A DNA stretch of 64,000 bases, taken from positions 124,001-188,000 of the IMG/VR virus record IMGVR_UViG_3300035183_000733; one strand, 5' to 3'. Shown here piece after piece: positions 11,543 to 53,710 of the stretch (position 1 is the stretch's first letter; each line of letters starts with the position of its first letter). The position numbers and the translations under genes are program-made. The notes under the pieces are model-generated. The model was given only the letters and a program-made list of their open reading frames with translations. It was not told where the DNA came from and searched no databases.

Positions 11543-11947
11543 TTAGTTTTCTTCGTCCTTTTCTTTCTCGTCCTCGGACTCTTCGGACTCTTCGGACTCA
11601 AAATCGTCTATAGATTTGAGCTTCTTCAACTCCTCATCGTCCGGATCGAGGTAGTCGTCAGTAGCCATGAAATTACCGTACTTGAGCGGTCCAGTATACC
11701 CGACGGTCTCGCCCGGGAAGTCCTGCGACATTCCCATGCCCGAGATCTCTCCCTGGTACCTGCTGAACGATGAGCTGTCCGCCTCGTCGACACCCTCGGC
11801 CTTCTCAATGTCCGGTTTCTTGTCGGCGTAGTCGTTCCACGTCCAGATAGACCTCTTGTAATTCTTACGTACGAGCTCGTATCCCTTGTCTCCGGGATAT
11901 GGCTTGATTGCAGACTTCGGTGGTTTGTATGATGATGTGTCGCTCAT
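11543..11947 (-). CDS. hypothetical acidic protein
   Basis: 134-aa ORF; CTS-like LKKLKSIDDFESE near the C-terminus. Confidence 0.6.
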   Translation of the reverse strand: MSDTSSYKPPKSAIKPYPGDKGYELVRKNYKRSIWTWNDYADKKPDIEKAEGVDEADSSSFSRYQGEISGMGMSQDFPGETVGYTGPLKYGNFMATDDYLDPDDEELKKLKSIDDFESEESEESEDEKEKDEEN

Positions 11948-12688: not shown

Positions 12689-12860
12689 ATCAATTGTGGT
12701 TTAGTTTTCTTCGTCCTTTTCTTTCTCGTCCTCGGACTCTTCGGACTCAAAATCGTTTAGTTCTGGATCGGTGCCGCGCTCCTCGTCATTGGGTTCCCTC
12801 GGAGCCTCAGCATCCTTCTTCGTTTACCGAAAAATCCTCAAATAGTTTTATATTCTTCAT
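12689..12860. repeat. collapsed tandem duplicate of 11531-12686
   Basis: Three co-linear pieces matching 11531-11607 (one 9-bp repeat unit fewer), 12228-12293 and 12647-12686. Confidence 0.9.
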
Positions 12861-13387
12861 TTAACAATGTAGTTTAGTTTGCCGGCTTCTACCTCCTGCA
12901 TCTTCCAAGCGCCCTGGCCACCTGGCCACTTGTCGAGATGCGCAGTCATCTTAGACGTGTACTGAGTGTTCCTCAGGTTAGCCTGCATCTCGTCGTAGAA
13001 CTTGGTAACTTTCGGATTCTTCTGCAGGTAGTCCTCAACGCATTTGCAGAGCATCTCGAGTACTTTGTTGAGTTCACGCTCGTCGACCTCGATGTGGTTG
13101 TCGTTGGTCTCGAAATTTCCCTTGTCGATAACAGCCTGATCGATAGCATCGACCGGCAATTCCGTTATGGACAGCACTGAGTATTCGGCCTTGCCCTCAG
13201 ATGGTTGTGCGAACTTGCTGAACTTGCCGATGCTTATCACGAAACCGCGCTGAGTCTCCGCCCCTACCTTGAAGAAGTAGTTAGCCACGTCGCCGTTCTT
13301 GGCGTAGAAAAAAGGAAGATCGCCGTAGCCGTCCTCGTTTACGTAGTTCTCGTTTACGAACCTATCGAATGTGAATATCTTCCTCAT
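12857..13387 (-). CDS. putative internal head protein (CTS-like N-terminus)
   Basis: Starts MRKIFTFDRFVNENYVNE. Confidence 0.65.
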   Translation of the reverse strand: MRKIFTFDRFVNENYVNEDGYGDLPFFYAKNGDVANYFFKVGAETQRGFVISIGKFSKFAQPSEGKAEYSVLSITELPVDAIDQAVIDKGNFETNDNHIEVDERELNKVLEMLCKCVEDYLQKNPKVTKFYDEMQANLRNTQYTSKMTAHLDKWPGGQGAWKMQEVEAGKLNYIVK

Positions 13388-13713: not shown

Positions 13714-14112
13714 TACTTCTTAAGAGTTAGTTTTACGGACTCGTCCGCCTCATTGATGCGTTAAAATTGTTTATTTTGCTCATTGTAGTGGTAACTATTT
13801 CTTTTCTTATATATCATTCAGAAATTTCTGTTCTTCGGGTATTTCGTGAAGTTAAATGTCATGTCCGGGGACTGGTCGATGAGCCCCTGAGTTATATATA
13901 TCGATTTCGACCCACGGAAGTCCAGTCCAGTCCAGTCCTCGCTCGAAAAAGTGCTCTGCCCGCACAAACCATCTTCGGCGTGACAACGAGGTCGGGCCGT
14001 TGACCATGCACCAGGGTCTAATCTGTATCTGGGTAAAAAAATTAAAAACCGTTCCCTCTACGGAACGGTTATTGTAGAGAATGAATGTTATCTGCTTGGT
14101 ACTGTGCATCCA

Positions 14113-16041
14113 TTACTGATTGGCGGGTTCTTTGCTATTATGGATGTCGTTCCTAAGTATAGGATACAAGCCCTGCACCGTCTTTGGCACGTGCGTCTTG
14201 AACTCGCCGAACTTGTCCTCGTCCACGAGCTTGCGCACGTCGGTACCCGATATGATCCTCCGAGTCTCCATCACCTCGAACTTCTCGTCGAGGTCGAGCT
14301 CGTTGTTGCGCTTGAAGTTAAACTCGAGCTGCTTGCGGTAGTCGTTTATCCTGTCAGGACCCGCGCCCCACAGTATCGGCTCGAACTCCGGCCTCAGCGA
14401 ATCTATGATGTCCTGTATGAAGCCCCTGCCGACTATCCTGTAGCCGATCACGAGGTCGTTGGTGTCCTTGTGCAGGTTGCCAAGCATCGTCCTCAGTGTG
14501 GATATAGTGAACGGGCTGTTGCCCGACTTGTTGTGTCCCGGATGCACGGCGACTATTACGACGGGCAAGCCGTTGGCCTCGTTAAGTTCCTTCACCATCT
14601 CGGCGTGCCCGTTGTGGAACGGCTGGAACCTTCCGACTATTATGTTAACCCTCTTTCCCTTCTTCTTGGATTTCTTCTTGACGTCCTCCTCTTCTTTCGG
14701 CTCATCGGCGGACAAAAGGTCCATAGTGTTTTTGAGCCCGGTCATTTCAGGATCGGAATCATCCACAGAATCACCATCGGTGTCTGCGTCCTCGTCCTCA
14801 ACTTCGGGCCTGCCCCTCTGTGCTATGAACTCGCCGAACAATGGCACGTCGTTTTCGTTGAGGCTCTCCCTTAGGTTCTGTGATAGGTGGTTGTTTATCT
14901 TGTCTATGGTGCCATTGAACTGGCGGATAACCTCCTGGCTGAAGAAGTTGTTTGCCTTCTTCTTGTGCTTGCGCAGAGATGCCAGCATTATCTTGAACAG
15001 TTTCTTGTACGAGTCCGCCGAGTCTATGAGATCGAGCGCCTCCTGGTTCGGTATCATCTGCCTGTTGAGGTCGAACTCCTTTTTCTTCATGTAAGCCGGC
15101 TCGGAGAAGTTGATGTTCTTGTAGTCCTCCCCCCTTTCGGATATGAACTTTATGAATAGGTCGCAGATGAAGTTTATGTACCTGTCGTCGAAGTTACGCC
15201 CCTTCGGCTTGAACTTCTTTAGGTTTAGGTTCTCGACGTAGTTGGCTATGTCGATGAGCGTCATGTAATAGATGTCGTTCGGCGTGTCGTTCGTCTCGTT
15301 GACCCTGTTCTGCGCCATCTGCGAAAATATCGGGTCCACCATCTTGGCAAGCACCACGTCATCGTCGTCGCTGCCGAACCTAAACACTATTCCCTCTATT
15401 GGCTTCTCCAGATCCTTGTTCAGGACCGTGCTGCGCATCTTTGGGTTCAGAATGGATATTACGTACTTCACGAAGGACTCGGTCTTGAACTTCTTCTCGA
15501 GCTCGGCCTGCGGCGTGTCGAGGAAGTCGAGGATCTTTATCCTCTGGTCGTCGTTGAGAACGCCCTGGAATATTATCGGCGCGCGCTCCACCTGCAGGAT
15601 GTCTGCCCACTTATCGAGCTCTTCCTTGTCCTGGATTGTACGGACCATCTTGCCGGCCGAGTTTTTCACGTGAATGTACGACAGCACCAATCCGTTCTTC
15701 GGGAGCTTGTCATAAACAAGCTCCTGCGGATTTGAGTTGGCGAAGTACTCCATACCGAACCTCCATCCACTGGGTAGCTTGGCAAGCACCTTGTCGCCAA
15801 GGCTGTTGATATGCTCGATAGGTGCCTCGTAATAACGCACGAGGGTCCTGTCCACCTGGGAAATTGGGTTTGTAGTGTTGCGCTTGAAGAATTCGATCTT
15901 CTTGCTGATCGGATTCTTCTCTACACCAAAGGCGCTCGCGTCGAGCTTTTCGTTTATAGTGACATAACTGTCGAATAGTTTGTCCAGAAAATCTTTGCCC
16001 TTCTTTTTGTAGATTTCGTTTAAGTGTGCTATTCCCGCCAT
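14113..16041 (-). CDS. RNA-ligase-like nucleotidyltransferase fused to a HIGH-motif (cytidylyl/NMN adenylyltransferase-like) domain
   Basis: N-terminal EKLDAS, FGMEY, PIIFQG, EGIVFR, AKMVDP (ligase motifs I-V); C-terminal GRFQPFHNGH and ISGTDVR. Confidence 0.75.
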   Translation of the reverse strand: MAGIAHLNEIYKKKGKDFLDKLFDSYVTINEKLDASAFGVEKNPISKKIEFFKRNTTNPISQVDRTLVRYYEAPIEHINSLGDKVLAKLPSGWRFGMEYFANSNPQELVYDKLPKNGLVLSYIHVKNSAGKMVRTIQDKEELDKWADILQVERAPIIFQGVLNDDQRIKILDFLDTPQAELEKKFKTESFVKYVISILNPKMRSTVLNKDLEKPIEGIVFRFGSDDDDVVLAKMVDPIFSQMAQNRVNETNDTPNDIYYMTLIDIANYVENLNLKKFKPKGRNFDDRYINFICDLFIKFISERGEDYKNINFSEPAYMKKKEFDLNRQMIPNQEALDLIDSADSYKKLFKIMLASLRKHKKKANNFFSQEVIRQFNGTIDKINNHLSQNLRESLNENDVPLFGEFIAQRGRPEVEDEDADTDGDSVDDSDPEMTGLKNTMDLLSADEPKEEEDVKKKSKKKGKRVNIIVGRFQPFHNGHAEMVKELNEANGLPVVIVAVHPGHNKSGNSPFTISTLRTMLGNLHKDTNDLVIGYRIVGRGFIQDIIDSLRPEFEPILWGAGPDRINDYRKQLEFNFKRNNELDLDEKFEVMETRRIISGTDVRKLVDEDKFGEFKTHVPKTVQGLYPILRNDIHNSKEPANQ

Positions 16042-16054
16042 AACTTTCTGTTTA

Positions 16055-16522
16055 TTAGTTAAGGTTTATCTTTATCTTCTTCTTGTTTTTATATATCACC
16101 TCTTGATCGCCTATCGTTACCTGACCGTTTAGCGGCAACGTGAAGTTCAGGATGACATTCTCTATGGCGGTGATCACGACCTCGAGGAACCTCCTTGATT
16201 TGTACTTCAGCGCATTGGGATCTATGCTTTTTATGTACCCATACAGCTCTATCAGGTTCTCGTCCTTCTGGTGCTGTATTATCTCGTACAGGTCGCTCTC
16301 CACTTCATATACAACCTCGTCCCCTATCCATATATCCCAGTTGCCAGTGAAGTTGGGACCCATGAACCCGGAATCGCCTCGCATCGTCACGAACGATACA
16401 GTCTCGTCCTCGTGCTTCTCTGCACCTATCACGCTCTCGCCTAAGAACAACTGCAGCGCGACAATCAGGAAGCTATTACTATTCTGCACCATCGGGTTTC
16501 TATTTCTTTTTGAGTTCATCAT
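16055..16522 (-). CDS. hypothetical protein
   Basis: 155-aa ORF in the co-directional cluster. Confidence 0.6.
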   Translation of the reverse strand: MMNSKRNRNPMVQNSNSFLIVALQLFLGESVIGAEKHEDETVSFVTMRGDSGFMGPNFTGNWDIWIGDEVVYEVESDLYEIIQHQKDENLIELYGYIKSIDPNALKYKSRRFLEVVITAIENVILNFTLPLNGQVTIGDQEVIYKNKKKIKINLN

Positions 16523-16599
16523 CTATTTTATACCCCACAACCCAATCTGTTTCATATACCCATATAAACCCCTTATGTGTTAGTTCTACGCTCAGTCTT

Positions 16600-16731
16600 T
16601 GGGATTAGCTCGAATGCAAAATTATCTTCGCCATATTTGTTCCAAGCCCTCTGTATGCACATTTTTATGAACATTACCCAATTAAAAATCACCTGTGTTT
16701 TTTATTTACTATGCGATATATGCCAGGTATA
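16600..16731 (-). pseudogene. degenerate GIY-YIG homing endonuclease
   Basis: Fragments PGIYRIVNKNTGDF* and, in a shifted frame, QRAWNKYGEDNFAFELI. Confidence 0.75.
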
Positions 16732-17625
16732 TTATTTTTCAAGTTCGGCCGGGATTTCCAACTTAACCCGTTTTAAAAATTTAATACAATTCCGTTTGAT
16801 TTCGTCCAATTTATCATGGAACATATAATCGGGTTTATTTATATATTCGAACACCTGCTCGAATGTTTCTGCATCTTTGGGCCGTATTCCAGGACCCAGC
16901 ACGAACTCCAGAAAGTCCTTTGGAGACCTGGTTATCAGCTCCTCGTGCTCCGGTTGTATGACCGGATTCTTGAGCAGTTTCTTCTTACCAACGTACGATT
17001 TCCTTATCTTGCTGAGACCGTCGTTGAGCCTCATCATGTAGCCGGAGAACCCGAGCAAGTTGCCGTGCTCGTCGCGTTCCTCCTCTCCCGTTAGCACCGA
17101 CAGGATGGCGGCGAACAGCCAGTTCCTGTGCGCGCTCTTGTACTTGCTCTCGCCCTTCTTGTAGTTGGGGGAATGGTATATGAACTTCGCCCACTCCATA
17201 TTCTTCAGCGGGAGGAAGTCCACCTGTACGTAACCGAGGTTGGGATCACCCTTGATAGGGTACGACATCGACACGACCTCGAGGCCGCGCATCCACTTTA
17301 TCTGGAACTCGGGGAACTTGCGCTTTAGCAAGTCGTACACCTGCTTTAGGCCCTGCGTCTCTACGACGCCCTGCTTCTCACAGAACTCCTTCATGGGTAT
17401 GCCCACGTCGAGGTCACCAGATACGTCCTCGTCGGACTCCTTCTTGCCGGCAGAGCCTATGAGCAGTGCGTCGGTGCCCCAGCTCGAAATACCGAGTGCC
17501 GGGAACACGTTGTCTTGTATCGAGTCAAGCGTAGCCTGCACCTCGCTCTGCTTGATGCTGCGGGTGTTGTCAAGCGCGTTGCCGCCCTCGAAAAGAAAGT
17601 CGTTGAATGTGTGGATATGCTTCAC
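16732..17625 (-). CDS. pol-beta-superfamily nucleotidyltransferase with CTS-like N-terminus
   Basis: MKHIHTFNDFLFE-GGNA; IGSAGKK..SGDLD; VQVDF third Asp. Confidence 0.7.
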   Translation of the reverse strand: MKHIHTFNDFLFEGGNALDNTRSIKQSEVQATLDSIQDNVFPALGISSWGTDALLIGSAGKKESDEDVSGDLDVGIPMKEFCEKQGVVETQGLKQVYDLLKRKFPEFQIKWMRGLEVVSMSYPIKGDPNLGYVQVDFLPLKNMEWAKFIYHSPNYKKGESKYKSAHRNWLFAAILSVLTGEEERDEHGNLLGFSGYMMRLNDGLSKIRKSYVGKKKLLKNPVIQPEHEELITRSPKDFLEFVLGPGIRPKDAETFEQVFEYINKPDYMFHDKLDEIKRNCIKFLKRVKLEIPAELEK

Positions 17626-17654
17626 GATTTATATATCCACAAAAACGGTGATAA

Positions 17655-17783: not shown

Positions 17784-18725
17784 CTATTTTTGTTTAACAA
17801 CAAAGAGGCAGCTGTTCGCACCGTCGGAAATTTCCGGGATCACGTACCCATCCTCACCGTCAACAAATATGGACGAAATATCGGCACTCGGCGCATCGTT
17901 GGCGCCAGAATAGTGGTCAACAGACATGCCCTTGGTGTTGTTTGACATCTTGTCCATGGACACCCAAACCACCTCGGAATCATTGGTTAAGTCGTACTTC
18001 TCGAACCAGTTAGAAACCTCCTGTTCGGAGAACAGTCCCAGCTCGTCCACGAAATACTTTACGAACTCCTTCATGGTCCAACGCTTGTCCCAGTGGTTGT
18101 AGTATATCTTGGACTTGTTCTCGTTGATTTTAGTATTGCGAGGATCGAACACAACGTATACAGTGTAAGTTCCCTTCCCGTAATAATTCGTGGTGCACTT
18201 CTTTAGGATTATCCCGTCGTATCCGCGCTTCTCTAACGAAGCTCTGTACTTATCGGCACCGCCAGCATCCTTTATTTCGTCAAAATATATCTGCACCGAG
18301 TCCATATCGTTATCGGCATCGTAGTCCTTGTGTTTGTCATCGATGACGTAAGGCTTATCTATACTGATGGTCACGTTCATAACACGTCCCTTGCCGCTCT
18401 TGGACACGTATTTGCCCTTGTCGGCATCGAAGTGCGTTAGACCTGCGAAGAACTCGGCCATTGTATCGTTATCGGTGAAGAACACGCCCATGCCATTATC
18501 GGGGGAGTCTGTGCCGTACATCCCGTTGGCCTCATCATGACTGACCTGGAACTTATCGAATTTAGGAGACTTTGTACCGTGCAGCACATTGTAAGTGGAT
18601 TCGAACACGAACTGCTCGAACATCTTTATGCGGCGCGGCTCCTTGCCACACGTGTGCGGTATGGCTATCCTGGTTTTTACCCCGTGCTCCTGCATAGAGC
18701 ATGCCTTGCAATAACGTTTTTTCAT
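17784..18725 (-). CDS. ADP-ribosyltransferase-like (ART-PolyVal-type) domain protein
   Basis: LHGT..KFDKF, GMGVFFTD...AEFFA, GYDGII, VVFDP; internal IKMFEQFVFE CTS-like peptide. Confidence 0.6.
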   Translation of the reverse strand: MKKRYCKACSMQEHGVKTRIAIPHTCGKEPRRIKMFEQFVFESTYNVLHGTKSPKFDKFQVSHDEANGMYGTDSPDNGMGVFFTDNDTMAEFFAGLTHFDADKGKYVSKSGKGRVMNVTISIDKPYVIDDKHKDYDADNDMDSVQIYFDEIKDAGGADKYRASLEKRGYDGIILKKCTTNYYGKGTYTVYVVFDPRNTKINENKSKIYYNHWDKRWTMKEFVKYFVDELGLFSEQEVSNWFEKYDLTNDSEVVWVSMDKMSNNTKGMSVDHYSGANDAPSADISSIFVDGEDGYVIPEISDGANSCLFVVKQK

Positions 18726-18757
18726 ATCTTATATATACGCCCCCGAGGTTACCAAAC

Positions 18758-18787
18758 AAGGAGGCCCGACGTTAATCGGGCCTCCTT
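18758..18787 (-). terminator. intrinsic terminator after uvsW
   Basis: aaggaggcccga/tcgggcctcctt hairpin. Confidence 0.75.
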
Positions 18788-20343
18788 TATCTGCGAAGAT
18801 CTATATTGAATTCCTTGTACGGGAACTTCTCCTTCTCGTATATCTTGATGCGTTCGTACATGTGGTTGAGCAAGTAGTTGGGCTTGCCGCCGTGACTGAA
18901 GTCGTCCACGAAGTCCACCACTATCGCCGTCTCCTTATCCGCGTGCAGCCTCATCATACGGCCTATCGATTGTTTGATGATGTTCTCGCTCTTGTACGAC
19001 TCGACAAGGAAGATGTTGTGCAGGTTCTTTATGGATATACCTGTCGAGAAAGTACCGAAGCTTGCTATGAGAATCCTGTTCTCACCCGCTTCCATCCTCT
19101 TCTTGTACTCGTCCCTCAGGCTGTTGTCGGTGTCGCCGTCGACGTAGTACACCTCCTTCTTCGGGTCCTTCTCCCTGATGAGGTCGTATATCGCGCGGCC
19201 GTACCCCTCCTCCACACTCTGGAACAGGACGATGGAGTTCTTGGTGGTCCTTAGTATAAAGTCCACCACAAAGTTCAGCCTCTCCCTCGATCGTATCACG
19301 AGCTTCTTCTCGAGGTTGAATATGTCGGAGCCCTCGAGGTCGGTCCTCGTCTGCTTCAACCTGGCGAGCTGCGCTCTGGTCTCGTCGTTGAGGTAGTTCA
19401 TCCTTACTATGCGGATGTCCACCGGAGTCGCGTACTTGTTCTGGAACAAGAAGTCCGCTGACACCTCGTTAACCATAGGTCCGAGACAAACCTGCGATGT
19501 AAAGAAGTCTGCCGAATCCCTACCTGCCGCCGTGAGCGTGCCGGACAGACCGAACCTGTACCTGCCGCCGCCTCCGTTCGCTATCTTGCCGATTATCTCC
19601 TTTATCGACTTGGCCGGCGTCTGGTGCGCCTCGTCCACGAACGCGCAATCGAAAGAGCCGAGCATCTCCCGCTCGAACTTTACGAGCGTCTGCCAAGTGC
19701 CAATGACCACGTTGGCCTCCGAGCGTATTTCCTTCGCGCCGTCGCCGACCTGCTGGAACTTCATACCCACCCTGTACGCTCCGTACTCCTGGAAGTCCTC
19801 TATTCCCTGCACCACGAGGTTCAGTGTCGGTACTATCATTATGAAACGCTTGATGCGCTTTGTGTGAAGCATGAACGCGATAGCCATGAAGGTTATCAGC
19901 GTCTTGCCGGCCGACGTGGCGAGCTCCTGGCTCGTGCGCCTGAACTTGCAGATCAAGAACGCCGCCTTTATCTGGTAGTCGCGCGGTTTCTTGTTCGGGT
20001 CTCCGCCAATACCATCCTTAAAGAACTCGTTCACCCAAGCGGTGAACTCCTCCATTGTGAGGCCGTCGTCGATGGTGTCTCTCAAACCGTCGATGGTGAC
20101 GCCGAGACCGTACTGCTTCGATACGTTGAGCAACTCGGCCCACAGGCCTATTGGCAGGAACCTCTTCTTCTTGAAGAACTCTATGTTACCGTCCCAGGAC
20201 TTGTTCTTGCTGTACTTCTTCCTGAAGAAATGGTTAGCGACCTTCTTGGTGAAGGAGATCTCAATTTGGCGTAGGTCGAGCTCGTCGTCGTATTCGACGA
20301 GCCTCAACCACTCACCATTGTCCATTACCTCGAAGTGCATCAT
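18787..20343 (-). CDS. uvsW: UvsW-like SF2 DNA helicase
   Basis: PRDYQ, LATSAGKT, IVPTLNLVVQ, FVDEAH, RFGLSGT, GTFSTGISIKNLHNI, QSIGR.MR. Confidence 0.9.
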   Translation of the reverse strand: MMHFEVMDNGEWLRLVEYDDELDLRQIEISFTKKVANHFFRKKYSKNKSWDGNIEFFKKKRFLPIGLWAELLNVSKQYGLGVTIDGLRDTIDDGLTMEEFTAWVNEFFKDGIGGDPNKKPRDYQIKAAFLICKFRRTSQELATSAGKTLITFMAIAFMLHTKRIKRFIMIVPTLNLVVQGIEDFQEYGAYRVGMKFQQVGDGAKEIRSEANVVIGTWQTLVKFEREMLGSFDCAFVDEAHQTPAKSIKEIIGKIANGGGGRYRFGLSGTLTAAGRDSADFFTSQVCLGPMVNEVSADFLFQNKYATPVDIRIVRMNYLNDETRAQLARLKQTRTDLEGSDIFNLEKKLVIRSRERLNFVVDFILRTTKNSIVLFQSVEEGYGRAIYDLIREKDPKKEVYYVDGDTDNSLRDEYKKRMEAGENRILIASFGTFSTGISIKNLHNIFLVESYKSENIIKQSIGRMMRLHADKETAIVVDFVDDFSHGGKPNYLLNHMYERIKIYEKEKFPYKEFNIDLRR

Positions 20344-21616: not shown

Positions 21617-22741
21617 TTATATGTTTATTCCGTCAAGTTTGTGCTGCGTGAAGTAGTCCTCGAAGTCGTACTTCTTGTTGTTCGCCCACTCGTAAACGCG
21701 TACGTCGTTCAAGTCCTTTATCTTGTGCGCGGGTATCTCGTTGTCGGACAGGAACTTCTTCCACATGAACACGCTGTCGCCAGCCGCCAGGTACTCGAGC
21801 GCCTTGTTGCGACCCGCCTCGTCGTTGTCCTGGAACCACCTCTTGTTGTCCAGGTCGAACGGCCACTCGTTATTTATGGAGCACGTCGCGGCCGAGTTGC
21901 CCCCGAAGCAGAAGTGGTCGAGCGGGCCCTCGAATATAGTTATCATCCTGTTGAAGTCCATCTGGAGCACGCCAAATATCGTGCTGAGGTGGTTCACCTT
22001 CGACACGTACTCGAGGAACGCAGGATCGTTGCGGCGCATGAACTTCGACCACACGTCCTCGATGCCGTAGGTCTTGTACTTCGCTCCCGTCTTCTCTGCC
22101 TCGCCGAACTGTCTCGTCTGCATGCCGAATATCCAGTCGCCGGACTTGTCGAGATTGAATATGAAGAGCCGCTTCCTGTAGTTGTCCCACGCGAAATGGT
22201 TGCCGAGCTTCTGCTGCCTCTTGGACAGGTACACGCCGATGGGGTGGTTCTCCCAGATGTTGTAGAGCTTGCACGCCTTCATCATGTCCGCCCTCGGCAC
22301 GAGGGCCTTGGAGAAATCTATGGACGACATCGCGTCCACATTCAGCTCATAACTCCGCATCTTGCTGAGCCGAGACGTCTTCTTGCTCTCGTCTATGCTC
22401 AGGCGCGCCGCCACCTTCTCGTCCTCGGTCAGCTCGTCGTAGCAGTCGAAGTCCTTGAGGAACCAGATGAAGTCGGTGTACTTCTCGCATCCCGCGTTGT
22501 AGCACTTGAAGTAAAGCCAGTTGGTGTAGAAGTTGCCCCTCTTCTTGCGAGGGTCTGCCGAGTCGCCGCAGTACGGGCAGCAGAAGTTCTGCCTCACGCC
22601 CTTGTGTAGTACGGTCTGTCTCTCAGAGTCGCCGGGGAACCTCTTCCTGAGCACAGCGTGCAGCAGCGTGTCCACCCTGTCAAGCGACATCTGTACCTGC
22701 GGCTTGGATTCGCCGGACATCTTGAATTCTAAATTCTGCAT
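21617..22741 (-). CDS. T4 gp61-like DNA primase
   Basis: Zn finger CCPYCGDS...KRG...FKCYNAGC; TOPRIM IFEGPLD and QDNDEAG. Confidence 0.85.
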   Translation of the reverse strand: MQNLEFKMSGESKPQVQMSLDRVDTLLHAVLRKRFPGDSERQTVLHKGVRQNFCCPYCGDSADPRKKRGNFYTNWLYFKCYNAGCEKYTDFIWFLKDFDCYDELTEDEKVAARLSIDESKKTSRLSKMRSYELNVDAMSSIDFSKALVPRADMMKACKLYNIWENHPIGVYLSKRQQKLGNHFAWDNYRKRLFIFNLDKSGDWIFGMQTRQFGEAEKTGAKYKTYGIEDVWSKFMRRNDPAFLEYVSKVNHLSTIFGVLQMDFNRMITIFEGPLDHFCFGGNSAATCSINNEWPFDLDNKRWFQDNDEAGRNKALEYLAAGDSVFMWKKFLSDNEIPAHKIKDLNDVRVYEWANNKKYDFEDYFTQHKLDGINI

Positions 22742-22845: not shown

Positions 22846-23811
22846 TTACAGGTTGTTGTAGAGGTCGTCGAGGCTCGATACAGAACCACTGCCTTTTGTC
22901 TCCGCCTTAGAAGCGGCCTTCGCGCCGGTACCGCCCATCAGGTCGTCGAAGCTGGTCGATGGCCTGGCTGCCGGAGTCTCCGATGCCGTGCCGTCCGATG
23001 CAGGGGTCTTGGTTCCGGCCTTGCCTGCGCCACCGAGGATCTGCTCCACGAGCCTTCCGTCAGGTATGATGTTGCGAATGGCGTTCAGGACTTTCTCGTA
23101 CTGCTCCTCGGTCCACTCCTTGTAGTCGTACTTCTCGAGCTCTGGCGAGTTAGCCTTGAGCCACTCCACCACGCGAGCCATGTCCTCCTTTGTCCTCTGG
23201 ATAGGCTTGCCTTCCAGGACGAGCGGGGTCTTGTCACCCACGAACTCGCAGAGGTCGTAGTTGTTCCACTTCTGCTTCTTCACGATGTGAAGCGCGAAAA
23301 GCTTGCCGTTGAAGAGGTCGTACGGGTTGATTGGCTCGCCGAACTCCGATGGCTTAAGAAGCGCCTCGATTTTCTGGTTGATCTTGATGCCGAATTTGAA
23401 CACCATGATTTTGCCCTCGAGCTCAGGCTGGTTCGGATCTTTGATGATCTGAACGAGGCTGAAGAAGTTGTCGTTCCTCGAGAACTTCTCTGCCAGCTCC
23501 TGGTCGCGTACTGATGTGCTCTTCTTGAGCTTCCAGAACGTGTCCGCGAGTATCGACTTCTTGCCCACTGTAGCGGGATCGTCGACACCGAAGCTCTCCC
23601 CCGAGATAGGGTCTTCGAGCCAGTAGTAGCTCTTCTTGATTTTAGACTTCTCGCTGTTCCTCACGTTAGGGAGGAAGCGGATAAGCGCTTTGTAGATGCC
23701 GTCGCGTCCTTTGTCGGCGGATGGCGCATAGATCTCTCCGGCCTTACCGGTCTTCTGCGGAGTAATTAGATTCTCCGATGAGAGGTTGAAAATGTCGAAC
23801 TCGTTGCTCAT
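22846..23811 (-). CDS. T4 gp32-like single-stranded DNA-binding protein
   Basis: ALIRFLP, YQIIKDP.QPELEGKIMVFKFG.KI-type core, WNNYD.CEF, acidic SLDDLYNNL tail; start set at ATG 23811. Confidence 0.85.
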   Translation of the reverse strand: MSNEFDIFNLSSENLITPQKTGKAGEIYAPSADKGRDGIYKALIRFLPNVRNSEKSKIKKSYYWLEDPISGESFGVDDPATVGKKSILADTFWKLKKSTSVRDQELAEKFSRNDNFFSLVQIIKDPNQPELEGKIMVFKFGIKINQKIEALLKPSEFGEPINPYDLFNGKLFALHIVKKQKWNNYDLCEFVGDKTPLVLEGKPIQRTKEDMARVVEWLKANSPELEKYDYKEWTEEQYEKVLNAIRNIIPDGRLVEQILGGAGKAGTKTPASDGTASETPAARPSTSFDDLMGGTGAKAASKAETKGSGSVSSLDDLYNNL

Positions 23812-24229
23812 GACTTTGATGCTTTTTAATTTGACTTTAAATGAACTTTGATTGGGCGCTGAATGTACTCCGACGTTCAATCGTCCCTTTTACTCTCCCC
23901 CCCCTCACATGTTTCGGCCAGGGGGGTCCGAGTTTTTCCGTGCGCTAAATTTTCCAGTCTTCGGGAACATTTGCACCAAACAGGCGTAAAAAAATTAACC
24001 CAAGATGCCCCGGGATTAGATATACCTTCGACTGTTGATCTAACCACAGAACCGAGTCTCTCGCTAAAACTGAGAACTTCACAGGATCCGTCGCGCTCCA
24101 ACCGTCCAATGCGGCCCGAAGGGCGATGTTGTCTGTCTGATTTATATACCGGGAGGTCCATAGCGCCTTGTACGCGCTTTTGCTACAAATATTTCACACC
24201 GGTCGGATATATACCCTAAAGATTTCCGC

Positions 24230-26235: not shown

Positions 26236-26518
26236 AAAAATAATGCTATTCGAGCAGTTCCTCAACGAGGGAAAACGCAACAAGTTCTATCTCTTGAACT
26301 CAGGCGAGAAGATCGACACGTCGAATCCGATGTCGAACGGCCTCGTGTCCGGCCGGGAAGGATCCGGCAAGGAGGAGGACAAGATGACCTACCTGTTCGT
26401 CAAGACGTACAAGTACAAGAACCCGATCGTCATCGCCGGCAGCGACAAACCGGAAGGCTACGGCGTGGACACGGAAGGCGAGAAGTCAAATATCGCGCTG
26501 CTCGACGACATAAACCGC
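26232..26518 (+). pseudogene. 5' part of a CTS-bearing gene split by the inversion
   Basis: ATG AAAAAA TAATG is one A short of MKKIMLFEQFLNE; the 3' part lies at 25736-25837 on minus. Confidence 0.6.
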
Positions 26519-44100: not shown

Positions 44101-46541
44101 TCTCTTATTGGAGTCCTCGAATACGATGAGCTGAAGAAGTCGCCGTCTATGTCCTTCAGGTTGAAGAACGAGAACAGACCGACTTTAGGCCTGAACAGGT
44201 TGTACGCGGTGAACGTCTTCGTGGTTGTGCCAACGAGCGGTTCATCGAGCAGGTCATCGATATACGCGACGCCAAAATCGTTCCAGCCATCGAGACCCGC
44301 TATGTCGCTACCACCGGTTTCGAGTATGGGATCGTCTACATATCTTCCGACGTGAACTATCTTTGCGAGTCCGAGCTTGGACTTAACGAATACCTCCCCG
44401 TTATTAGTGAGCCTCTCAAAGTTCTCGAGGTCGTACCTGAATCTTATCTTGTTGTTGTCGGTGCCTCCCTCGAAGTACACCTTCTGTGCCGAGCTCGTTA
44501 CGAGCTGGCGCTGTAGTTCCATCCTGGTGAAGTCCGTTACATCAATGTTGCAGAAGAACGCATTCGGCGCGCTTGATCCTGAACGCATCCTTATCACCAC
44601 TTCGCTGTCTATTGCTATGGCGTCCCAAGTGCGTTGCTCTATCCTGTTGAATGCCGATGCTATTGACTGTGCAATCTCGGACAATGTCCCGTATGGGTGG
44701 AAGTAGATAGGGTTGTAGTTGTTAGCCGCGAGCGACTGGCCAGGACCCCATCCCTCTACAATGGATATGTGCCCATTTGTGGTGGTGAGGTCAATTGGCA
44801 AGTTTATGTTGAACGTAGTATATCCCAGCGAGAACACTGCGGCCGAAACTATGGTTCTCTTGATGCGGACGTTCTGTCCGTATTGGATCTCTATCTCGTC
44901 GCCTACGTTGTAGTAGGGGACGTAGTTTCCGTATATCGACACAAGCGTGCCGTTGGCCGGAATCGTGAACACCCTGCGGAGGTCGTTAGCCGTTATCTCG
45001 TCGAACGGCCCGTCGACGTCCGTCTGTGATCCGATGTTCCAGTGTATCTTTATTTTATCGCCGGGGTACAGTTGGTCCTTCACGTTCAGCACCATGTACG
45101 ATCTTCCCTTGTCGGTCAGCAGCGAACCGAACCCCTCAATCAGTCTCCTGCCTTCTCCTGCGAAGTCACCGAGGTTCACCGATTTGTTGCGGATCTGAAT
45201 ATCGGTGTCAGTTGTGTTGTACGTGCCGATGACCTCTGGGTTTTGGTTGAACGAGTAGAACAATCCTTTCTTGTCCTGCACCCAGTAGAGGCGCGGCTCG
45301 AAATTGGCACCGGTGAAATCGTTCGAACTCGGGATGAATCCGTCGGGGTTCATGTAATACAGTCGCACGCCGTCCTCGTTGTTCTGGTAGAACGCCTCGC
45401 CCTGGTCCCTGTAACCGCGGTTAGGACGCTTAGGTGCCGGAGTGTTGCCCGAAACACCTCTGTTTGCGAACAGTTTGTCGCCGTCGAGCTCGAAGCTTCC
45501 CGTAGGTATCTCGTTAACGTAAAACCCGAAGTACCTTGGTATGCTATAGAGGCTTGCCGACTCGTCGTTGAACAGGAACTCCATGTTGAGCAGGTGCGGA
45601 CAAATAATGCCGTGCCTCTGGAACCCGTTAGTCACGTACTCCTCGAACTCCATCTGCGTCTGCGCGGACTGCCAGTATTTGCGCATAAACTCGCCCTTGC
45701 TCGATAGAATACCGTCCTGGTACGCTATTCCGTTCCAGGTAGTCATCAGCCCGTCCTCGAACTTAGTCGTTATAGGCGCGGCAGGAAATCTCGGGTTGTT
45801 CCTGAAATTACGTATGTACTGCCCTATCTTGCTCGAAGATGTGAGGTCGAACGTCTTTATTATCTGCGCTCTCTTCATTATGCTGTTGAACTGCGCAACG
45901 TCGTCAATTGGGAGGTCCTTGTTTTCATTCAAGCTCACGACCTTGCCGCTACCCTGGTAAACTGTATAGGTTGTAGAGACGTTGCTGGTGAAGGTGTCGC
46001 CGTCCACGTAGAGGTTGTTCTCATAGACCACCTGGTATCCATCCCCGACAACCTTGTATTCTGTAGGTGTATCAATAACTATAGACCCGCTCGGGACGTC
46101 GTCGTTGTACGGGAAGTCTGTGGGTTCGTCTACCCTCAGGATTATGAAGTAGTTCGGTATGTCCTCCCTCAGCCACAACGGCGCGAGGTACGAATACGCC
46201 TCGTCGTAAAGTTTGCTGATTAGTGGTTCGGCACCCATTGAATAGAACAGCTCAAGCTGTGATGCGAACTTCGTGCCGGTGGACTCCGGATTGGAGTCCT
46301 GACGCACCTCGAACAATACTTCCGGTGGGACGGACCCGATGAAATCGCGCACGTCCACGTCGAAGCTGGAAGTTTGAGAGAGCCGGAACTTCTTGAACTC
46401 CGAACCGGACAGGACCTTGTTGGCGTCTATGGTGTTTAGCCAGATGTCGCCCTTGGAGTCAACCGTTAGTTTTATGTTTCCCGACAACTTCGGATTGGTT
46501 CTCACCAATCCGAAGGACGAGGTCTTATCGCTTAAGTTCAT
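41109..46541 (-). CDS. giant virion structural protein (baseplate/tail, putative)
   Basis: 1810-aa intact beta-rich ORF among structural genes. Confidence 0.65.
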   Translation of the reverse strand: MNLSDKTSSFGLVRTNPKLSGNIKLTVDSKGDIWLNTIDANKVLSGSEFKKFRLSQTSSFDVDVRDFIGSVPPEVLFEVRQDSNPESTGTKFASQLELFYSMGAEPLISKLYDEAYSYLAPLWLREDIPNYFIILRVDEPTDFPYNDDVPSGSIVIDTPTEYKVVGDGYQVVYENNLYVDGDTFTSNVSTTYTVYQGSGKVVSLNENKDLPIDDVAQFNSIMKRAQIIKTFDLTSSSKIGQYIRNFRNNPRFPAAPITTKFEDGLMTTWNGIAYQDGILSSKGEFMRKYWQSAQTQMEFEEYVTNGFQRHGIICPHLLNMEFLFNDESASLYSIPRYFGFYVNEIPTGSFELDGDKLFANRGVSGNTPAPKRPNRGYRDQGEAFYQNNEDGVRLYYMNPDGFIPSSNDFTGANFEPRLYWVQDKKGLFYSFNQNPEVIGTYNTTDTDIQIRNKSVNLGDFAGEGRRLIEGFGSLLTDKGRSYMVLNVKDQLYPGDKIKIHWNIGSQTDVDGPFDEITANDLRRVFTIPANGTLVSIYGNYVPYYNVGDEIEIQYGQNVRIKRTIVSAAVFSLGYTTFNINLPIDLTTTNGHISIVEGWGPGQSLAANNYNPIYFHPYGTLSEIAQSIASAFNRIEQRTWDAIAIDSEVVIRMRSGSSAPNAFFCNIDVTDFTRMELQRQLVTSSAQKVYFEGGTDNNKIRFRYDLENFERLTNNGEVFVKSKLGLAKIVHVGRYVDDPILETGGSDIAGLDGWNDFGVAYIDDLLDEPLVGTTTKTFTAYNLFRPKVGLFSFFNLKDIDGDFFSSSYSRTPIREYHRYFDIPADEPNMIVAGRRYLVLGEPSDEIDYNGSSVFGGAAFYGVSGVDSFTVVNGTPVVVALVFYQRAVMPYETLIAGHTYVVLGDTTESINYVDPFNNNAPTVYNTGSTFVAQPLFPTYTYSIGTPVVIDLDARTLDGDIRSFPGFFTFRDFLTVEEEAVDKSTLLFTQRDKFFFNTVPSEYDYLKENFLKEFAIKSRMMPSTSKWVYSGGTDIRDNGYRLNTHPVFGSFNFSPSFTQKTQNPEAFTHEWYYLEGQPHNYPESSLNDNYYFFPDKLDISDLNNADPSAQDYFLEYFTFQPSANTPDQDRYTIFDFNSETGVCETFFRGVKVQIKEVIRDTAAPQLRAIKPPFKQGSTKFDGYKFSCILRVHKETPEVVESPVTINVYNNETFKTVTIVIDLILEDYRTLSLIDPNNMGSIYSPEVRYQDLVDISTDYITLYSLKSKKVEHIYNNSGTLLLTGTDVHQIGDIKLSTSLTMASPSGPIGPFTYAYVYNNPDYDWDLRDEIQNFRKENTFYGKFVFGDTKFPYPHSTTQTQILFGIPGTPGYPQDPSSPYDNFYAPFSVDQFDLPVASNAISIPFGSSFEWQGFATYQKEGGTNFYTPIMQRVAFATIAQKINEYSQYVKYKTYRWNGFTNVETSDEFYLELLEPATINKLESLIPLIDEDKPEEFNNVPIIGVNLTKVNSASIQYRYDGPYEPKFRNVLFFKGQKQDEIAGPSFDLSFKQATFNPNVKDFGLIKNMNYLKVSNSKVLDLANNDKYKSLYPLVGEIAIDQKDHFVFRSSWDPGFWRMFSSKTNFVNQAGTREMKEIKNFMGTKIMKTQDSIRLQDFTVEEVATLALINMDNVDSEIAWTQNATTVSGLVNIKKRLLRFFVETGANAEFVKLLMPEFGVGDPDSIDDDVVEYLTLNVLPVYEVKQADPYTKKYKDNTLALPIVRGDLSDANKLINGYSHDKNFTVTRISDFLYSFEYKIDTASEVSIAISFDIGRI

Positions 46542-46548
46542 CTATTCG

Positions 46549-50037: not shown

Positions 50038-50116
50038 TATTTTTCCTATTTGAAAATTTTCTGCCCAATCTGGGCTTCACTTATATATATTACAAGTAAA
50101 AACAAGCCCCATTTTA

Positions 50117-51082: not shown

Positions 51083-51106
51083 CTTTTATTTTGTCAATAA
51101 AGTCTT

Positions 51107-51114
51107 TATCTTTG
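51107..51114 (+). promoter_or_regulatory. Bacteroidota sigma-A -7 element TAnnTTTG
   Basis: Exact TATCTTTG 25 nt upstream of ATG 51140. Confidence 0.6.
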
Positions 51115-51139
51115 TTTGTATAACTCAAAAAACAAGAAA

Positions 51140-51559: not shown

Positions 51560-51580
51560 TACCGGACTTAAACCAAAAAT

Positions 51581-51607
51581 AAAAAGCCGCTCTCGAAGCG
51601 GCTTTTT
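51581..51607. terminator. bidirectional terminator
   Basis: aaaaagccgct/agcggcttttt between convergent genes. Confidence 0.85.
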
Positions 51608-51608
51608 A

Positions 51609-53687: not shown

Positions 53688-53710
53688 CTATACTTTCCTT
53701 TCTTTGATTA

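What the first reader, a model, noticed from the sequence alone, without database searches (positions are those of the whole stretch)
14113..17625. RNA-ligase-like/HIGH-transferase fusion near a CTS-tagged pol-beta NTase: candidate nucleotide-tagging or RNA-repair module
The 642-aa protein joins a covalent nucleotidyltransferase (ligase motifs, with an atypical KLDA in motif I) to a HIGH-motif adenylyl/cytidylyltransferase via an acidic linker. The second gene upstream encodes a GS..DxD NTase carrying the CTS-like tag, and an ART-like gene is next. One active site could make a dinucleotide (NAD-like or CDP-X) that the other transfers to RNA ends or proteins, or the set could heal and seal tRNAs cut by anticodon nucleases (inference). 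I know of no characterised enzyme with this architecture.
Basis: partly seen in the sequence, partly recalled or inferred. Interest (0 to 1): 0.7.

Follow-up and report, generated by a model that had tools for sequence, protein, structure and literature searches.

The report
Phage ligase–NMNAT fusion repair module
A huge T4-like phage encodes an RNA-ligase-like enzyme fused to an NAD-synthesis-like enzyme; this always travels with a small DNA-polymerase-beta-like enzyme as a conserved, uncharacterised kit, most likely for extending and re-sealing broken nucleic-acid strands.

Summary
Window 14113-16041(-) encodes a 642-aa protein with four parts:
- an Rnl2-type ligase (invariant Lys32, Glu98, Glu216, Lys233);
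- a helical domain;
- a disordered acidic/basic linker;
- an archaeal-NMNAT-like HIGH adenylyltransferase (GRFQPFHNGH, SGTDVR).

There are at least 539 full-length homologues, all from large phage contigs, and none is characterised.

The 297-aa gene at 16732-17625(-) is an active-looking pol-beta-superfamily nucleotidyltransferase. Its model is closest to family X polymerases. It has no Pfam family and is not RlaP by sequence.

This NTase is the true conserved partner, present in 36 of 50 loci. In distant phages the NMNAT-like part, the NTase and the ligase are three adjacent genes. In one locus the NMNAT-like part is fused to the NTase instead. A 176-aa downstream protein is fused to the ligase-NMNAT protein in others. 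The ART gene is not conserved (0 of 50).

The "CTS-like tag" is a real, enriched N-terminal motif resembling T4's MKTYQEFIAE. The module genes also carry the promoter motif found upstream of the portal and capsid operons.

Best reading: a late-made, probably virion-delivered extend-and-seal kit. The NMNAT-like acceptor and the substrate (RNA or DNA) are unresolved.

The parts
15307..16041 (-). Fusion protein aa 1-245: Rnl2-type covalent nucleotidyltransferase (ligase) domain. Motif I Lys32 is at 15946-15948.
   Evidence: PF09414 at E 1.5e-5. K32, E98, E216 and K233 are invariant. Matches T4 Rnl2 1s68/2hvq at Z 12.2/12.1 over residues 1-242, and Foldseek E 5e-7.
14869..15306 (-). Fusion protein aa 246-391: all-helical domain after the ligase core, in the position of the Rnl2/Trl1 C-terminal helical domain.
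   Evidence: The DSSP helices span residues 256-386 with pLDDT about 76-96. Foldseek alignments to full-length T4 Rnl2 span 353-376 columns. Trl1 ligase alignments reach residue 320.
14668..14868 (-). Fusion protein aa 392-458: disordered acidic-then-basic linker holding a conserved F402-x-x-F405 (FGEF) short motif.
   Evidence: pLDDT is below 50. F402 is invariant and F405 is at least 90% conserved. Composition.
14116..14667 (-). Fusion protein aa 459-642: archaeal-NMNAT-like HIGH-superfamily adenylyltransferase. HNGH is at 14605-14616; SGTDVR is at aa 598-603.
   Evidence: PF01467 at E 1.5e-8. phmmer hit to 1f9a at E 3e-5. VIA Z 15.6 with 153 of 164 residues aligned. NCBIfam NMNAT models score far below their cut-offs.
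16732..17625 (-). 297-aa pol-beta-superfamily NTase with a Pol X-like palm plus second subdomain; the conserved partner of the ligase. GTG start. The N-terminal tag is aa 1-13 (17587-17625). GS...DxD is at 17407-17457.
   Evidence: Alignment A3 invariants. AF2 pLDDT is 90.6, with residues 1-14 below 50. Closest folds are Pol beta/lambda/mu at Foldseek E 6e-5 and ASFV PolX at Z 9.4 with 164 of 176 residues aligned. A homologue is adjacent in 36 of 50 loci.
16055..16522 (-). 155-aa protein of unknown function between the NTase and the fusion; an occasional module member.
   Evidence: A homologue sits in the same position in 11 of 50 loci. No Pfam, PHROG or NCBIfam hit.
12857..13387 (-). 176-aa DUF6934-like protein carrying the same N-terminal tag; the fourth module member.
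   Evidence: A homologue lies downstream in 33 of 50 loci. It forms the C-terminal extension of the roughly 866-aa ligase-NMNAT proteins. DUF6934 is a lead. Tag.
17784..18725 (-). ART-PolyVal ADP-ribosyltransferase; a neighbour, not a conserved module member. The tag MFEQFVFE begins at Met35 (ATG 18621-18623).
   Evidence: PF18760 at E 1.7e-12. Found in 0 of 50 loci. Tag.
18729..18736 (-). ATATATAA promoter-like motif 3 nt upstream of the ART ORF.
   Evidence: There are 13 copies in the window against 0.9 expected. The motif also lies upstream of the portal gene and of the protease/capsid operon.
17629..17636 (-). ATATATAA motif 3 nt upstream of the NTase GTG.
16089..16096 (-). ATATATAA motif 47 nt upstream of the fusion gene's ATG.
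14047..14070 (-). Terminator-like hairpin (9-bp stem plus T-run) about 45 nt after the fusion gene's stop. It lies inside the 85-aa ORF 13852-14109, which is therefore probably not a gene.

Best explanation
The 642-aa protein is a true bifunctional enzyme. Its first part is an Rnl2-type polynucleotide ligase that works through a Lys32-AMP intermediate and seals 3'-OH/5'-phosphate nicks; it includes a helical accessory domain. A flexible linker ties this to an NMNAT-like ATP-dependent adenylyltransferase.

The protein is one component of a conserved module of huge T4-like phages. The obligate partner is the upstream 297-aa Pol X-like nucleotidyltransferase. A frequent fourth member is the 176-aa DUF6934-like protein.

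Most likely mechanism (inferred): 'extend and seal'. The NTase adds one or a few nucleotides to a recessed or trimmed 3'-OH. Ribonucleotides are likely, since Rnl2-type ligases need a ribo 3' end. The ligase then seals the nick. The NMNAT-like domain carries out a PPi-releasing AMP transfer onto a phosphate-bearing acceptor. The default acceptor is NMN, giving NAD+. The alternative is the 5'-phosphate end itself.

The genes have their own late-type promoters. The NTase, the 176-aa protein and the stand-alone NMNAT-like versions carry a T4-CTS-like N-terminal peptide. The kit is therefore probably loaded into the prohead, trimmed by the gp21-type protease, and delivered with the DNA into the next cell.

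Shown: folds, motifs, the co-occurrence and fusion pattern, and enrichment of the tag and the promoter motif. Inferred: substrates, order of steps, and packaging.
For: **Domain identities.**

**NTase.** The catalytic motifs are invariant. The closest folds are Pol beta/lambda/mu/ASFV PolX in four libraries, with a two-subdomain match of 164-194 residues; TUTases match only about 95 residues.

**Gene linkage.**
- The NTase lies directly upstream of the ligase in 36 of 50 loci.
- In L050, L052, L053, L063 and L064 the order is NMNAT-like gene, NTase gene, then a roughly 420-aa ligase gene. Two of the junctions in L050 are 2 nt apart.
- In L058 the NMNAT-like domain is fused to the NTase, with a ligase-like gene nearby.
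- ESM Atlas clusters combine CTP_transf_like with NTP_transf_2, with or without PAP2.
- The 176-aa protein is fused to ligase-NMNAT in the roughly 866-aa forms.

**Precedent.** RlaP NTases associate with RNA ligases and add 1-2 NMP to RNA 3' ends (PMC7824862; bioRxiv 10.64898/2025.12.29.696909).

**Tag.**
- 10 ORFs carry it against 0-1 in shuffles.
- It is shared by stand-alone NMNAT-like and 176-aa homologues.
- T4 IPII and IPIII start with MKTYQEFIAE.
- A gp21-type protease is present.
- Residues 1-14 of the NTase are unstructured.

**Promoter.** The ATATATAA motif is enriched about 14-fold and lies upstream of the portal gene, the protease/capsid operon and the three module genes. It is absent upstream of uvsW, primase and gp32.
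Against: No activity has been measured. The N-terminal ligase assignment rests on a borderline Pfam score, motif conservation and a predicted fold. Profile searches against PDB sequences found no ligase, and hhalign to T4 Rnl2 gave negligible probability, although motifs I and III lined up.

Motif V has a single invariant Lys rather than KxK (my reading). The Pol X likeness is structural only and modest (Z 9.4, TM about 0.35). No Pol X or RlaP HMM matches.

The C-domain scores far below NMNAT equivalog cut-offs: 28.5 against 181 bits. Its role in an extend-and-seal pathway is unexplained.

Fifteen of the 50 loci have the fusion but no NTase within 10 kb. Some distant ligases replace the motif III Glu with Ser.

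The ligase itself lacks the N-terminal tag. Packaging is inferred only from resemblance to T4. The tag also resembles the T4 clamp-binding ends SLDFLFG and SLDFLYE.
Confidence: 0.45

Rival explanations
1. A DNA-maintenance role at the replication or recombination stage rather than an injected kit. The Pol X-like enzyme fills short gaps in phage DNA or RNA-DNA junctions, possibly with ribonucleotides. The Rnl2-like ligase seals the ribo-terminated nick, for example during primer-junction processing or concatemer grooming before packaging. The shared short peptide would then be a hub-binding (clamp-type) motif, not a capsid-targeting signal.
For: - The module has a fixed place beside uvsW (44 of 50 loci), a primase-like gene (43 of 50) and gp32 (34 of 50).
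- The NTase has a Pol X-like fold.
- The tag of the 297-aa protein, NDFLFEG, is close to the T4 gp43 and gp55 clamp-binding ends LDFLFG and LDFLYE.
- A conserved FxEF motif persists inside the disordered linker of the fusion, as short linear binding motifs do.
- The genome has a separate RlaP and an Rnl5-like RNA ligase available for RNA repair.
- Established precedent for sealing after ribonucleotide addition: bacterial LigD POL+LIG and mycobacterial LigC/Prim-PolC (my knowledge, not tested here).
Against: - The genome already has an NAD-dependent LigA and a small ATP-ligase-like gene.
- The tag sits at N-termini and ends in Glu, like the T4 CTS. T4 clamp motifs are C-terminal.
- An ART-PolyVal protein, a domain typical of injected proteins (PMC5512222), carries the same tag.
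- The module genes use the structural-gene promoter motif, which uvsW, primase and gp32 lack.
Confidence: 0.2
2. An NAD+-centred counter-defence. The C-domain is simply an NMN adenylyltransferase that rebuilds NAD+ depleted by host NADase defences or consumed by the phage's own LigA, ART and PARP-like enzymes. Its fusion to the ligase or the NTase would reflect only co-expression or co-delivery, not a shared reaction pathway.
For: - The best sequence and fold matches are NMNATs.
- Both ATP-binding signatures and an SPF loop matching the archaeal NPFT segment are conserved.
- The phage invests heavily in NAD: NAMPT, Nudix, a second HIGH NTase, PARP-like and LigA genes.
- Phage NAD+ salvage by NadV plus HIGH NTases is documented (PMC7824862, PMC9503650).
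Against: - The genome already has a NAMPT / HIGH-NTase / Nudix cluster at 304-309 kb.
- The domain scores far below NMNAT equivalog thresholds.
- Its partners are always the ligase and/or the pol-beta NTase, in three different gene or fusion arrangements, which argues for a shared pathway.
- No NMN-producing enzyme is in the module.
Confidence: 0.15
3. The HIGH domain makes a dinucleotide (NAD-like or CDP-X), and the ligase-like domain or the NTase transfers it onto RNA ends or proteins. This would be capping or tagging rather than repair, possibly feeding the neighbouring ART.
For: - Two nucleotidyl-transfer sites sit on one chain.
- The NAD pyrophosphate bond is chemically the same as the ligase AppN intermediate (established chemistry).
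- An ART gene is adjacent in this genome.
Against: - The ART is absent from all 50 related loci.
- The ligase keeps the full nick-sealing motif set and a helical domain like that of Rnl2.
- There is no NAD-binding Ia-type domain, and no evidence for a protein target.
Confidence: 0.07

Closest known systems
T4 RNA ligase 2 (Rnl2, gp24.1) and kinetoplastid RNA-editing ligases
   Same: This is the best structural match for residues 1-242 (Z 12.2), and Foldseek aligns the full length. It shares motifs I, III and IV and a Lys in motif V, followed by a helical domain. In T4 too, rnlB lies about 3 kb from uvsW. In editosomes an Rnl2-type ligase works with a pol-beta TUTase (established knowledge).
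   Different: There is no significant sequence-profile match. Motif V has a single Lys. The protein is fused to an NMNAT-like domain, has its own Pol X-like partner, and has late-type promoters.
RlaP (PF10127) plus RNA ligase repair pairs
   Same: A pol-beta-superfamily NTase genomically tied to an RNA ligase. RlaP adds 1-2 NMP to damaged RNA 3' ends before ligation (PMC7824862; bioRxiv 10.64898/2025.12.29.696909).
   Different: None of the 23 members of the 297-aa family matches PF10127 at E up to 1, whereas the genome's real RlaP scores 59.9 bits elsewhere. The fold is closest to Pol X. There is an added HIGH NTase and a 176-aa partner.
Archaeal NMNAT / NadM / NadR adenylyltransferase domains
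   Same: GRFQPFHxGH and SxTxxR signatures; fold Z 13.5-15.6 (2qjo_A 13.5, 2qjt_B 13.7, 1f9a_A 15.6), with rmsd 2.3 A for 1f9a.
   Different: It scores 28.5 bits against the 181-bit equivalog cut-off. It is never paired here with Nudix or a kinase, only with a ligase and/or a pol-beta NTase.
Minimal viral Pol X plus ligase repair (ASFV PolX with ASFV ligase) and bacterial LigD POL+LIG
   Same: A small palm-plus-one-subdomain polymerase-like NTase (ASFV PolX: 164 of 176 residues aligned) encoded with a nick-sealing ligase. The logic is fill-then-seal.
   Different: There is no sequence homology. The ligase here is of the RNA-ligase type. Templated synthesis is unproven. The system is from a phage, not a eukaryotic virus or a bacterium.
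T4 capsid-targeting sequence proteins (IPI-III, Alt)
   Same: An N-terminal MK..[YF]-x-[ED]-F-[ILV]-x-E peptide. A gp21-type protease is in the genome. An ART carries the tag, as T4 Alt is a packaged ART (established knowledge).
   Different: Neither packaging nor cleavage has been shown. Here the cargo would be nucleotidyl-transfer enzymes.

Membership tests
ATP-dependent polynucleotide ligase, Rnl2 type (PF09414) | Motif I lysine nucleophile (KxDG) | tested here: met
   E31, K32 and D34 are invariant in 34 sequences. The family consensus is EKMDG; this protein has EKLDA. The Lys is kept even in the 25-30% identity clades.
ATP-dependent polynucleotide ligase, Rnl2 type (PF09414) | Motifs III, IV and V (Glu, Glu-Gly, Lys-x-Lys) | tested here: inconclusive
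   E98, E216-G217 and K233 are invariant. Motif V shows only one invariant Lys. Some distant clades have Asp or Ser at motif III.
ATP-dependent polynucleotide ligase, Rnl2 type (PF09414) | Family HMM above the gathering score | tested here: inconclusive
   This protein scores 25.6 bits against a 27-bit cut-off. Relatives score 27-36.4 bits.
ATP-dependent polynucleotide ligase, Rnl2 type (PF09414) | Ligase nucleotidyltransferase fold plus a helical C-domain | tested here: met
   Foldseek E 5e-7 to 2hvq/2hvr over 353-376 columns. VIA Z 12.2 to 1s68. Rnl5, Trl1 and REL1 score Z 10.7-11.6.
ATP-dependent polynucleotide ligase, Rnl2 type (PF09414) | Covalent Lys-AMP formation and sealing of nicks with a 3'-OH RNA strand | not testable with these tools
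   Needs biochemistry.
NMN adenylyltransferase (archaeal type, TIGR01527 / NF002243) | HxGH and SxxxxR ATP-binding signatures and a Rossmann-like HIGH fold | tested here: met
   H476-N-G-H479 and S598...R603 are conserved. Z 15.6 to 1f9a.
NMN adenylyltransferase (archaeal type, TIGR01527 / NF002243) | Equivalog HMM above the curated cut-off | tested here: not met
   TIGR01527 scores 28.5 against 181.2 bits. NF002243 scores 33.7 against 127 bits.
NMN adenylyltransferase (archaeal type, TIGR01527 / NF002243) | NMN as the acceptor substrate | not testable with these tools
   Only an SPF loop aligned to the archaeal NPFT segment could be noted.
RlaP (PF10127), for the 297-aa protein | Family HMM match | tested here: not met
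   No PF10127 hit for any of 23 members at E up to 1. The genome's own RlaP is found at 57 kb with 59.9 bits.
RlaP (PF10127), for the 297-aa protein | Genomic association with an RNA ligase | tested here: met
   36 of 50 loci, mostly directly upstream on the same strand.
Family X DNA polymerase, for the 297-aa protein | Pol-beta catalytic carboxylate triad on the palm | tested here: met
   G57-S58...D71-x-D73 and D136 are invariant.
Family X DNA polymerase, for the 297-aa protein | Palm plus nucleotide-selecting subdomain arrangement | tested here: inconclusive
   The top hits in PDB, AFDB and Swiss-Prot are Pol beta/lambda/mu/ASFV PolX. The support is modest, however: E 6e-5 to 2e-4, Z 9.4, TM 0.35-0.4.
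Family X DNA polymerase, for the 297-aa protein | Sequence-family membership; 8-kDa/HhH DNA-binding domains | tested here: not met
   No Pfam or PDB-profile hit. The model has no such domains, as in ASFV PolX.
T4-type capsid-targeting sequence | N-terminal peptide of the MKTYQEFIAE type ending in Glu, with a gp21-type protease in the genome | tested here: met
T4-type capsid-targeting sequence | Actual packaging into heads and cleavage | not testable with these tools
   Needs virion proteomics.

The most novel reading that the evidence does not exclude
The NMNAT-like enzyme has been recruited from NAD synthesis to polynucleotide ends. It would make, or resolve, the A(5')pp(5')N bond on a 5'-phosphorylated strand. 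This is the same bond as in NAD+ and in the ligase step-2 intermediate. Together with a Pol X-like NTase and an Rnl2-like ligase it would form a virion-delivered 'extend, adenylylate, seal' machine that repairs phage or host nucleic acid in the first moments of infection. This would also give Rnl2-type ligases a defined biological pathway.
Probability: 0.12. Interest if true: 0.85.

Novelty: new variant of a known kind. Interest (0 to 1): 0.62.

Why it matters
Rnl2-type ligases are standard laboratory tools, yet their role in phage biology has stayed unclear since their discovery. This module places one in a defined, widely conserved set of partners: at least 539 ligase-NMNAT clusters and at least 376 NTase clusters, all unannotated. 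The partners can be purified and tested together.

If the NMNAT-like domain acts on nucleic-acid ends, that would be a new use of the HIGH fold. If the tagged enzymes are packaged, nucleic-acid repair enzymes would join the list of proteins that phages inject with their DNA. The Pol X-like family has no Pfam model and could be a new source of compact template-dependent or terminal transferases.

Tried and rejected
- **Megablast** of the locus against phage records gave no match.
- **Profile searches against PDB sequences** with the ligase part (A2) and the NTase family (A3) found no ligase or polymerase.
- **hhalign** of A2 against T4 Rnl2 gave a probability below 1%, although motifs I and III aligned. 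It is not used as evidence.
- **Complex prediction** of the fusion with the 297-aa protein returned no verdict, score 0.00. This is neither for nor against binding.
- **C-terminal extension of the roughly 1000-aa homologues.** No Pfam hit was found. The Atlas gave only weak restriction-endonuclease-like leads at 0.78-0.79. Left unexplained.
- **The 176-aa protein.** Only a DUF6934 lead was found.
- **The fusion as the replicative DNA ligase.** Rejected, because the genome has a LigA.
- **The ART as a module member.** Rejected: 0 of 50 loci.
- **PPi-recycling by the HIGH domain.** I considered reverse NMNAT regenerating ATP. It is made less likely by a polyvalent protein that joins an inorganic pyrophosphatase with a HIGH NTase and a weak Rnl1-like region.
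- **A GIY-YIG endonuclease remnant at 16573-16698.** Pfam gives no support.
- **Sequencing runs.** Only DNA runs from a microbial mat hold the locus, and the RNA runs hold only small shares.
- **NMN-pocket residues.** A residue-level comparison was not done, because no accessible source listed the residues.

Full report
**Setting.** The window is bases 124001-188000 of a 373,759-bp virus record from a microbial-mat metagenome. The phage is T4-like. The window holds a gp32-like gene (22846-23880), a primase-like gene (21617-22741) and a UvsW-type helicase (18787-20343). Elsewhere the genome has a gp23-type capsid gene, a T4-type portal and a gp21-type prohead protease. All genes of the finding are on the minus strand.

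**The 642-aa protein (14113-16041).**
- Pfam finds RNA_ligase PF09414 at aa 26-234. E is 1.5e-5 and the score, 25.6 bits, is just under the 27-bit cut-off. Pfam also finds CTP_transf_like PF01467 at aa 467-604, E 1.5e-8.
- A database search returned at least 539 full-length homologues of 43-83% identity on contigs up to 437 kb. Sources name them at most 'cytidyltransferase-like'.
- In an alignment of 34 of them, E31-K32-x-D34, G96-x-E98-Y99, E216-G217-x-V-F-R-F-G and K233-x-x-D236-P237 are invariant. So are G-R-F-Q-(P-F)-H-x-G-H and S598...R603.
The only real deviation I see is a single Lys in motif V.
- The AF2 model (pLDDT 81) has a ligase core at aa 1-245, a helical domain to about aa 390, a disordered acidic-then-basic linker at aa 392-458, and a Rossmann-like domain.
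- Foldseek ranks full-length T4 Rnl2 first at E 5e-7. An independent aligner gives Z 12.2 to Rnl2 for residues 1-241 and Z 15.6 (rmsd 2.3 A) to M. jannaschii NMNAT for residues 464-637.
- NCBIfam NMNAT equivalogs are matched far below their cut-offs. The C-domain is therefore NMNAT-like but not demonstrably an NMNAT.
- Sequence profiles alone do not reach any solved ligase.

**The 297-aa protein (16732-17625).**
- It has no Pfam, PHROG or NCBIfam hit.
- Twenty-three relatives share an invariant G-S...S-G-D-x-D, a third Asp (D136) and an S-P...E-S-K-Y-K...R-N block.
- Its model (pLDDT 90.6) is closest to family X polymerases in four libraries: Pol beta/lambda/mu and ASFV PolX. The match spans both subdomains, 164-194 residues. 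Terminal uridylyltransferases, CCA enzymes and CD-NTases match only the roughly 95-residue palm.
- The support is modest (Z 9.4) and structural only.
- The family has at least 376 clusters, all 'hypothetical'. Relatives occur in Lak megaphages, Atu_ph07 and a Sinorhizobium jumbo phage.
- It is not RlaP by sequence. The genome's real RlaP lies at 57 kb.

**Who belongs together.** I fetched 79 related loci from IMG/VR and compared the window's proteins with the 50 loci that carry a ligase-like gene.

| Gene | Loci with a homologue (of 50) |
|---|---|
| 297-aa NTase | 36 (almost always directly upstream, same strand) |
| UvsW | 44 |
| Primase-like | 43 |
| gp32 | 34 |
| 176-aa protein (12857-13387) | 33 |
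| 134-aa protein (11543-11947) | 30 |
| 155-aa protein | 11 |
| ART | 0 |

HMMs of the three enzyme parts then revealed alternative arrangements:
- **Three separate genes.** In L050, L052, L053, L063 and L064 the order is a roughly 200-aa NMNAT-like gene, the NTase gene, then a roughly 420-aa ligase gene without an NMNAT domain. In L050 two junctions are 2 nt apart.
- **NMNAT-like domain fused to the NTase.** In L058 one 503-aa ORF carries both, followed by an NTase paralogue and a ligase-like gene.
- **NMNAT-like gene next to the NTase.** L056, L059-L061, L065 and L067 show this without a visible ligase.
- **The 176-aa protein fused on.** The roughly 866-aa ligase-NMNAT proteins carry it as a C-terminal extension.
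- **Atlas clusters.** ESM Atlas clusters of viral proteins combine CTP_transf_like with NTP_transf_2, sometimes with a PAP2 phosphatase.

These interchangeable fusions are strong evidence that the ligase, the NMNAT-like enzyme, the NTase and the 176-aa protein act in one process. The ART is a local neighbour only.

**The tag and the promoters.**
- The strict pattern FxxF[LIVMF]xE lies within 10 residues of a start codon in 10 ORFs of the genome. Twenty codon-shuffled genomes gave 0-1 each. Ten of the 19 occurrences in long ORFs are N-terminal.
- Carriers include the NTase, the ART (from Met35), the 176-aa protein and window ORF 26243.
- Stand-alone NMNAT-like proteins and 176-aa homologues in other phages carry the tag too. 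Stand-alone ligases do not.
- The fusion keeps a conserved FGEF in its linker.
- The tag closely parallels the N-terminus MKTYQEFIAE of T4 IPII and IPIII. That peptide is known as the capsid-targeting sequence cut by gp21 (established knowledge). Residues 1-14 of the NTase are unstructured in the model.
- A rival resemblance exists. The T4 clamp-binding C-termini are SLDFLFG and SLDFLYE.
- Separately, ATATATAA occurs 13 times in the window against 0.9 expected, and 69 times in the genome. It is mostly on the coding strand upstream of genes, including the portal (46 nt), the protease/capsid operon (26 nt) and the largest structural-looking ORFs. It lies 3, 3 and 47 nt upstream of the ART, the NTase and the fusion, but not upstream of uvsW, primase or gp32.
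- A hairpin follows uvsW, and a terminator-like hairpin follows the fusion.
- The block is thus a late-type transcription island inside the replication cluster. This, together with an ART-PolyVal carrying the tag (a domain of injected proteins, PMC5512222), makes capsid delivery the better reading of the tag. It remains unproven.

**What it most likely does.** The closest functional precedents are three. RlaP-RNA ligase pairs add 1-2 nucleotides to damaged RNA 3' ends and then ligate (PMC7824862; bioRxiv 10.64898/2025.12.29.696909). Editosome TUTase-REL1 pairs are the second. Pol X/ligase or LigD POL/LIG fill-and-seal systems are the third.

I therefore favour an extend-and-seal pathway on nicked or gapped duplex nucleic acid whose 3' strand ends in ribonucleotides. 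This fits both RNA repair and ribo-patch DNA repair.

The NMNAT-like step is the open piece. It could make NAD+, or it could transfer AMP to or from a 5'-phosphate end, since the bond is the same.

The module contains no kinase or phosphoesterase, so classical healing of 2',3'-cyclic-phosphate/5'-OH breaks is not encoded within it. The genome does have AAA_33 kinases, a canonical RlaP, an Rnl5-like ligase and a full NAD salvage island elsewhere.

A 2507-aa polyvalent ORF in another phage joins an inorganic pyrophosphatase, a weak Rnl1-like region and a HIGH NTase. This suggests the ligase-HIGH pairing recurs among injected proteins and runs in the PPi-releasing direction.

**Verdict.** The fusion and the NTase are parts of a large, conserved, unannotated phage module. 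It is a new variant of the known 'RNA ligase plus pol-beta NTase' theme, extended by an NMNAT-like enzyme and a probable capsid-delivery signal. The substrates and the role of the NMNAT-like domain need biochemistry.

Noticed in passing
Whole genome; examples at window 17587-17625, 18600-18623, 13349-13387 and 26243-26266: A class of proteins starts with MK..x.F[NDE]xF[VLI]xE. The strict form is found 10 times. Looser forms such as MKHLKLFETF, MKHIKSFDDH and MKIFRFEEF appear downstream of many ATATATAA motifs. All are of unknown function apart from the NTase and the ART.
   Followed up: partly
Window 2804, 10223, 13807, 13892, 16089, 16839, 17629, 18729, 27591, 32257, 41094, 50081, 58332 (motif starts): ATATATAA is about 14-fold enriched and sits upstream of the portal gene, the protease/capsid operon and large structural ORFs. 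It is probably this phage's late promoter, a variant of T4's TATAAATA, which itself occurs only once in the window.
   Followed up: partly
L008 = genome 299001-312000 (outside the window): An NAD/ADP-ribose and RNA-end island. It holds a 229-aa ATP-ligase/capping-like protein, a PARP-like protein (427 aa), a CCA-adding/polyA-polymerase-type enzyme, a second HIGH NTase, two Nudix proteins and a NAMPT. A LigA lies at 94-95 kb and an Rnl5-like ligase with an OB domain at 318 kb.
   Followed up: partly
L070:4007-11527: A 2507-aa polyvalent-type ORF in another phage with an inorganic pyrophosphatase (PF18823), a weak Rnl1-like match and a strong CTP_transf_like domain.
   Followed up: no
Window 18624-18725: The ART ORF can start 34 codons before the tag. 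That extension contains CxxC...HxC, a possible small zinc-binding element. The ATATATAA motif is only 3 nt from the first ATG, so the true start (Met1 or Met35) is uncertain.
   Followed up: no
Window 13852-14109: The 85-aa ORF just after the fusion contains the terminator-like hairpin and has no homologues in 50 loci. It is probably not a gene.
   Followed up: partly
Window 16573-16698: A short ORF fragment between the NTase and the 155-aa gene contains AWNKYGEDNFAFELI. From memory this recalls GIY-YIG homing endonucleases, but Pfam gives no support.
   Followed up: yes
L010 (T4 106000-116000): In T4 itself, rnlB (RNA ligase 2) lies about 3 kb from uvsW. This echoes the ligase-uvsW proximity conserved in 44 of 50 loci here.
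   Followed up: no
L090 (Atu_ph07 45370-58191): Downstream of the Atu_ph07 relative of the 297-aa NTase is a run of seven similar-sized (about 250-360 aa) hypothetical genes. Upstream is a primase/helicase gene. It may be a paralogue array.
   Followed up: no
Window 55095-57197 (+): A 700-aa protein with a BiPBP_C domain and a weak type-IX-secretion C-terminal sorting domain match. This may hint at a Bacteroidota host.
   Followed up: no
L051, L055, L057 ligase genes: In these 25-27% identity relatives the motif III Glu is replaced by Ser and motif IV is altered, while the motif I Lys is kept. They may be ligases that have changed or lost activity.
   Followed up: no
Genome 196385-197017 (L103): A 210-aa paralogue of the 297-aa NTase (28% identity) lies elsewhere in the genome, with a weak Polbeta PF18765 match.
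   Followed up: no
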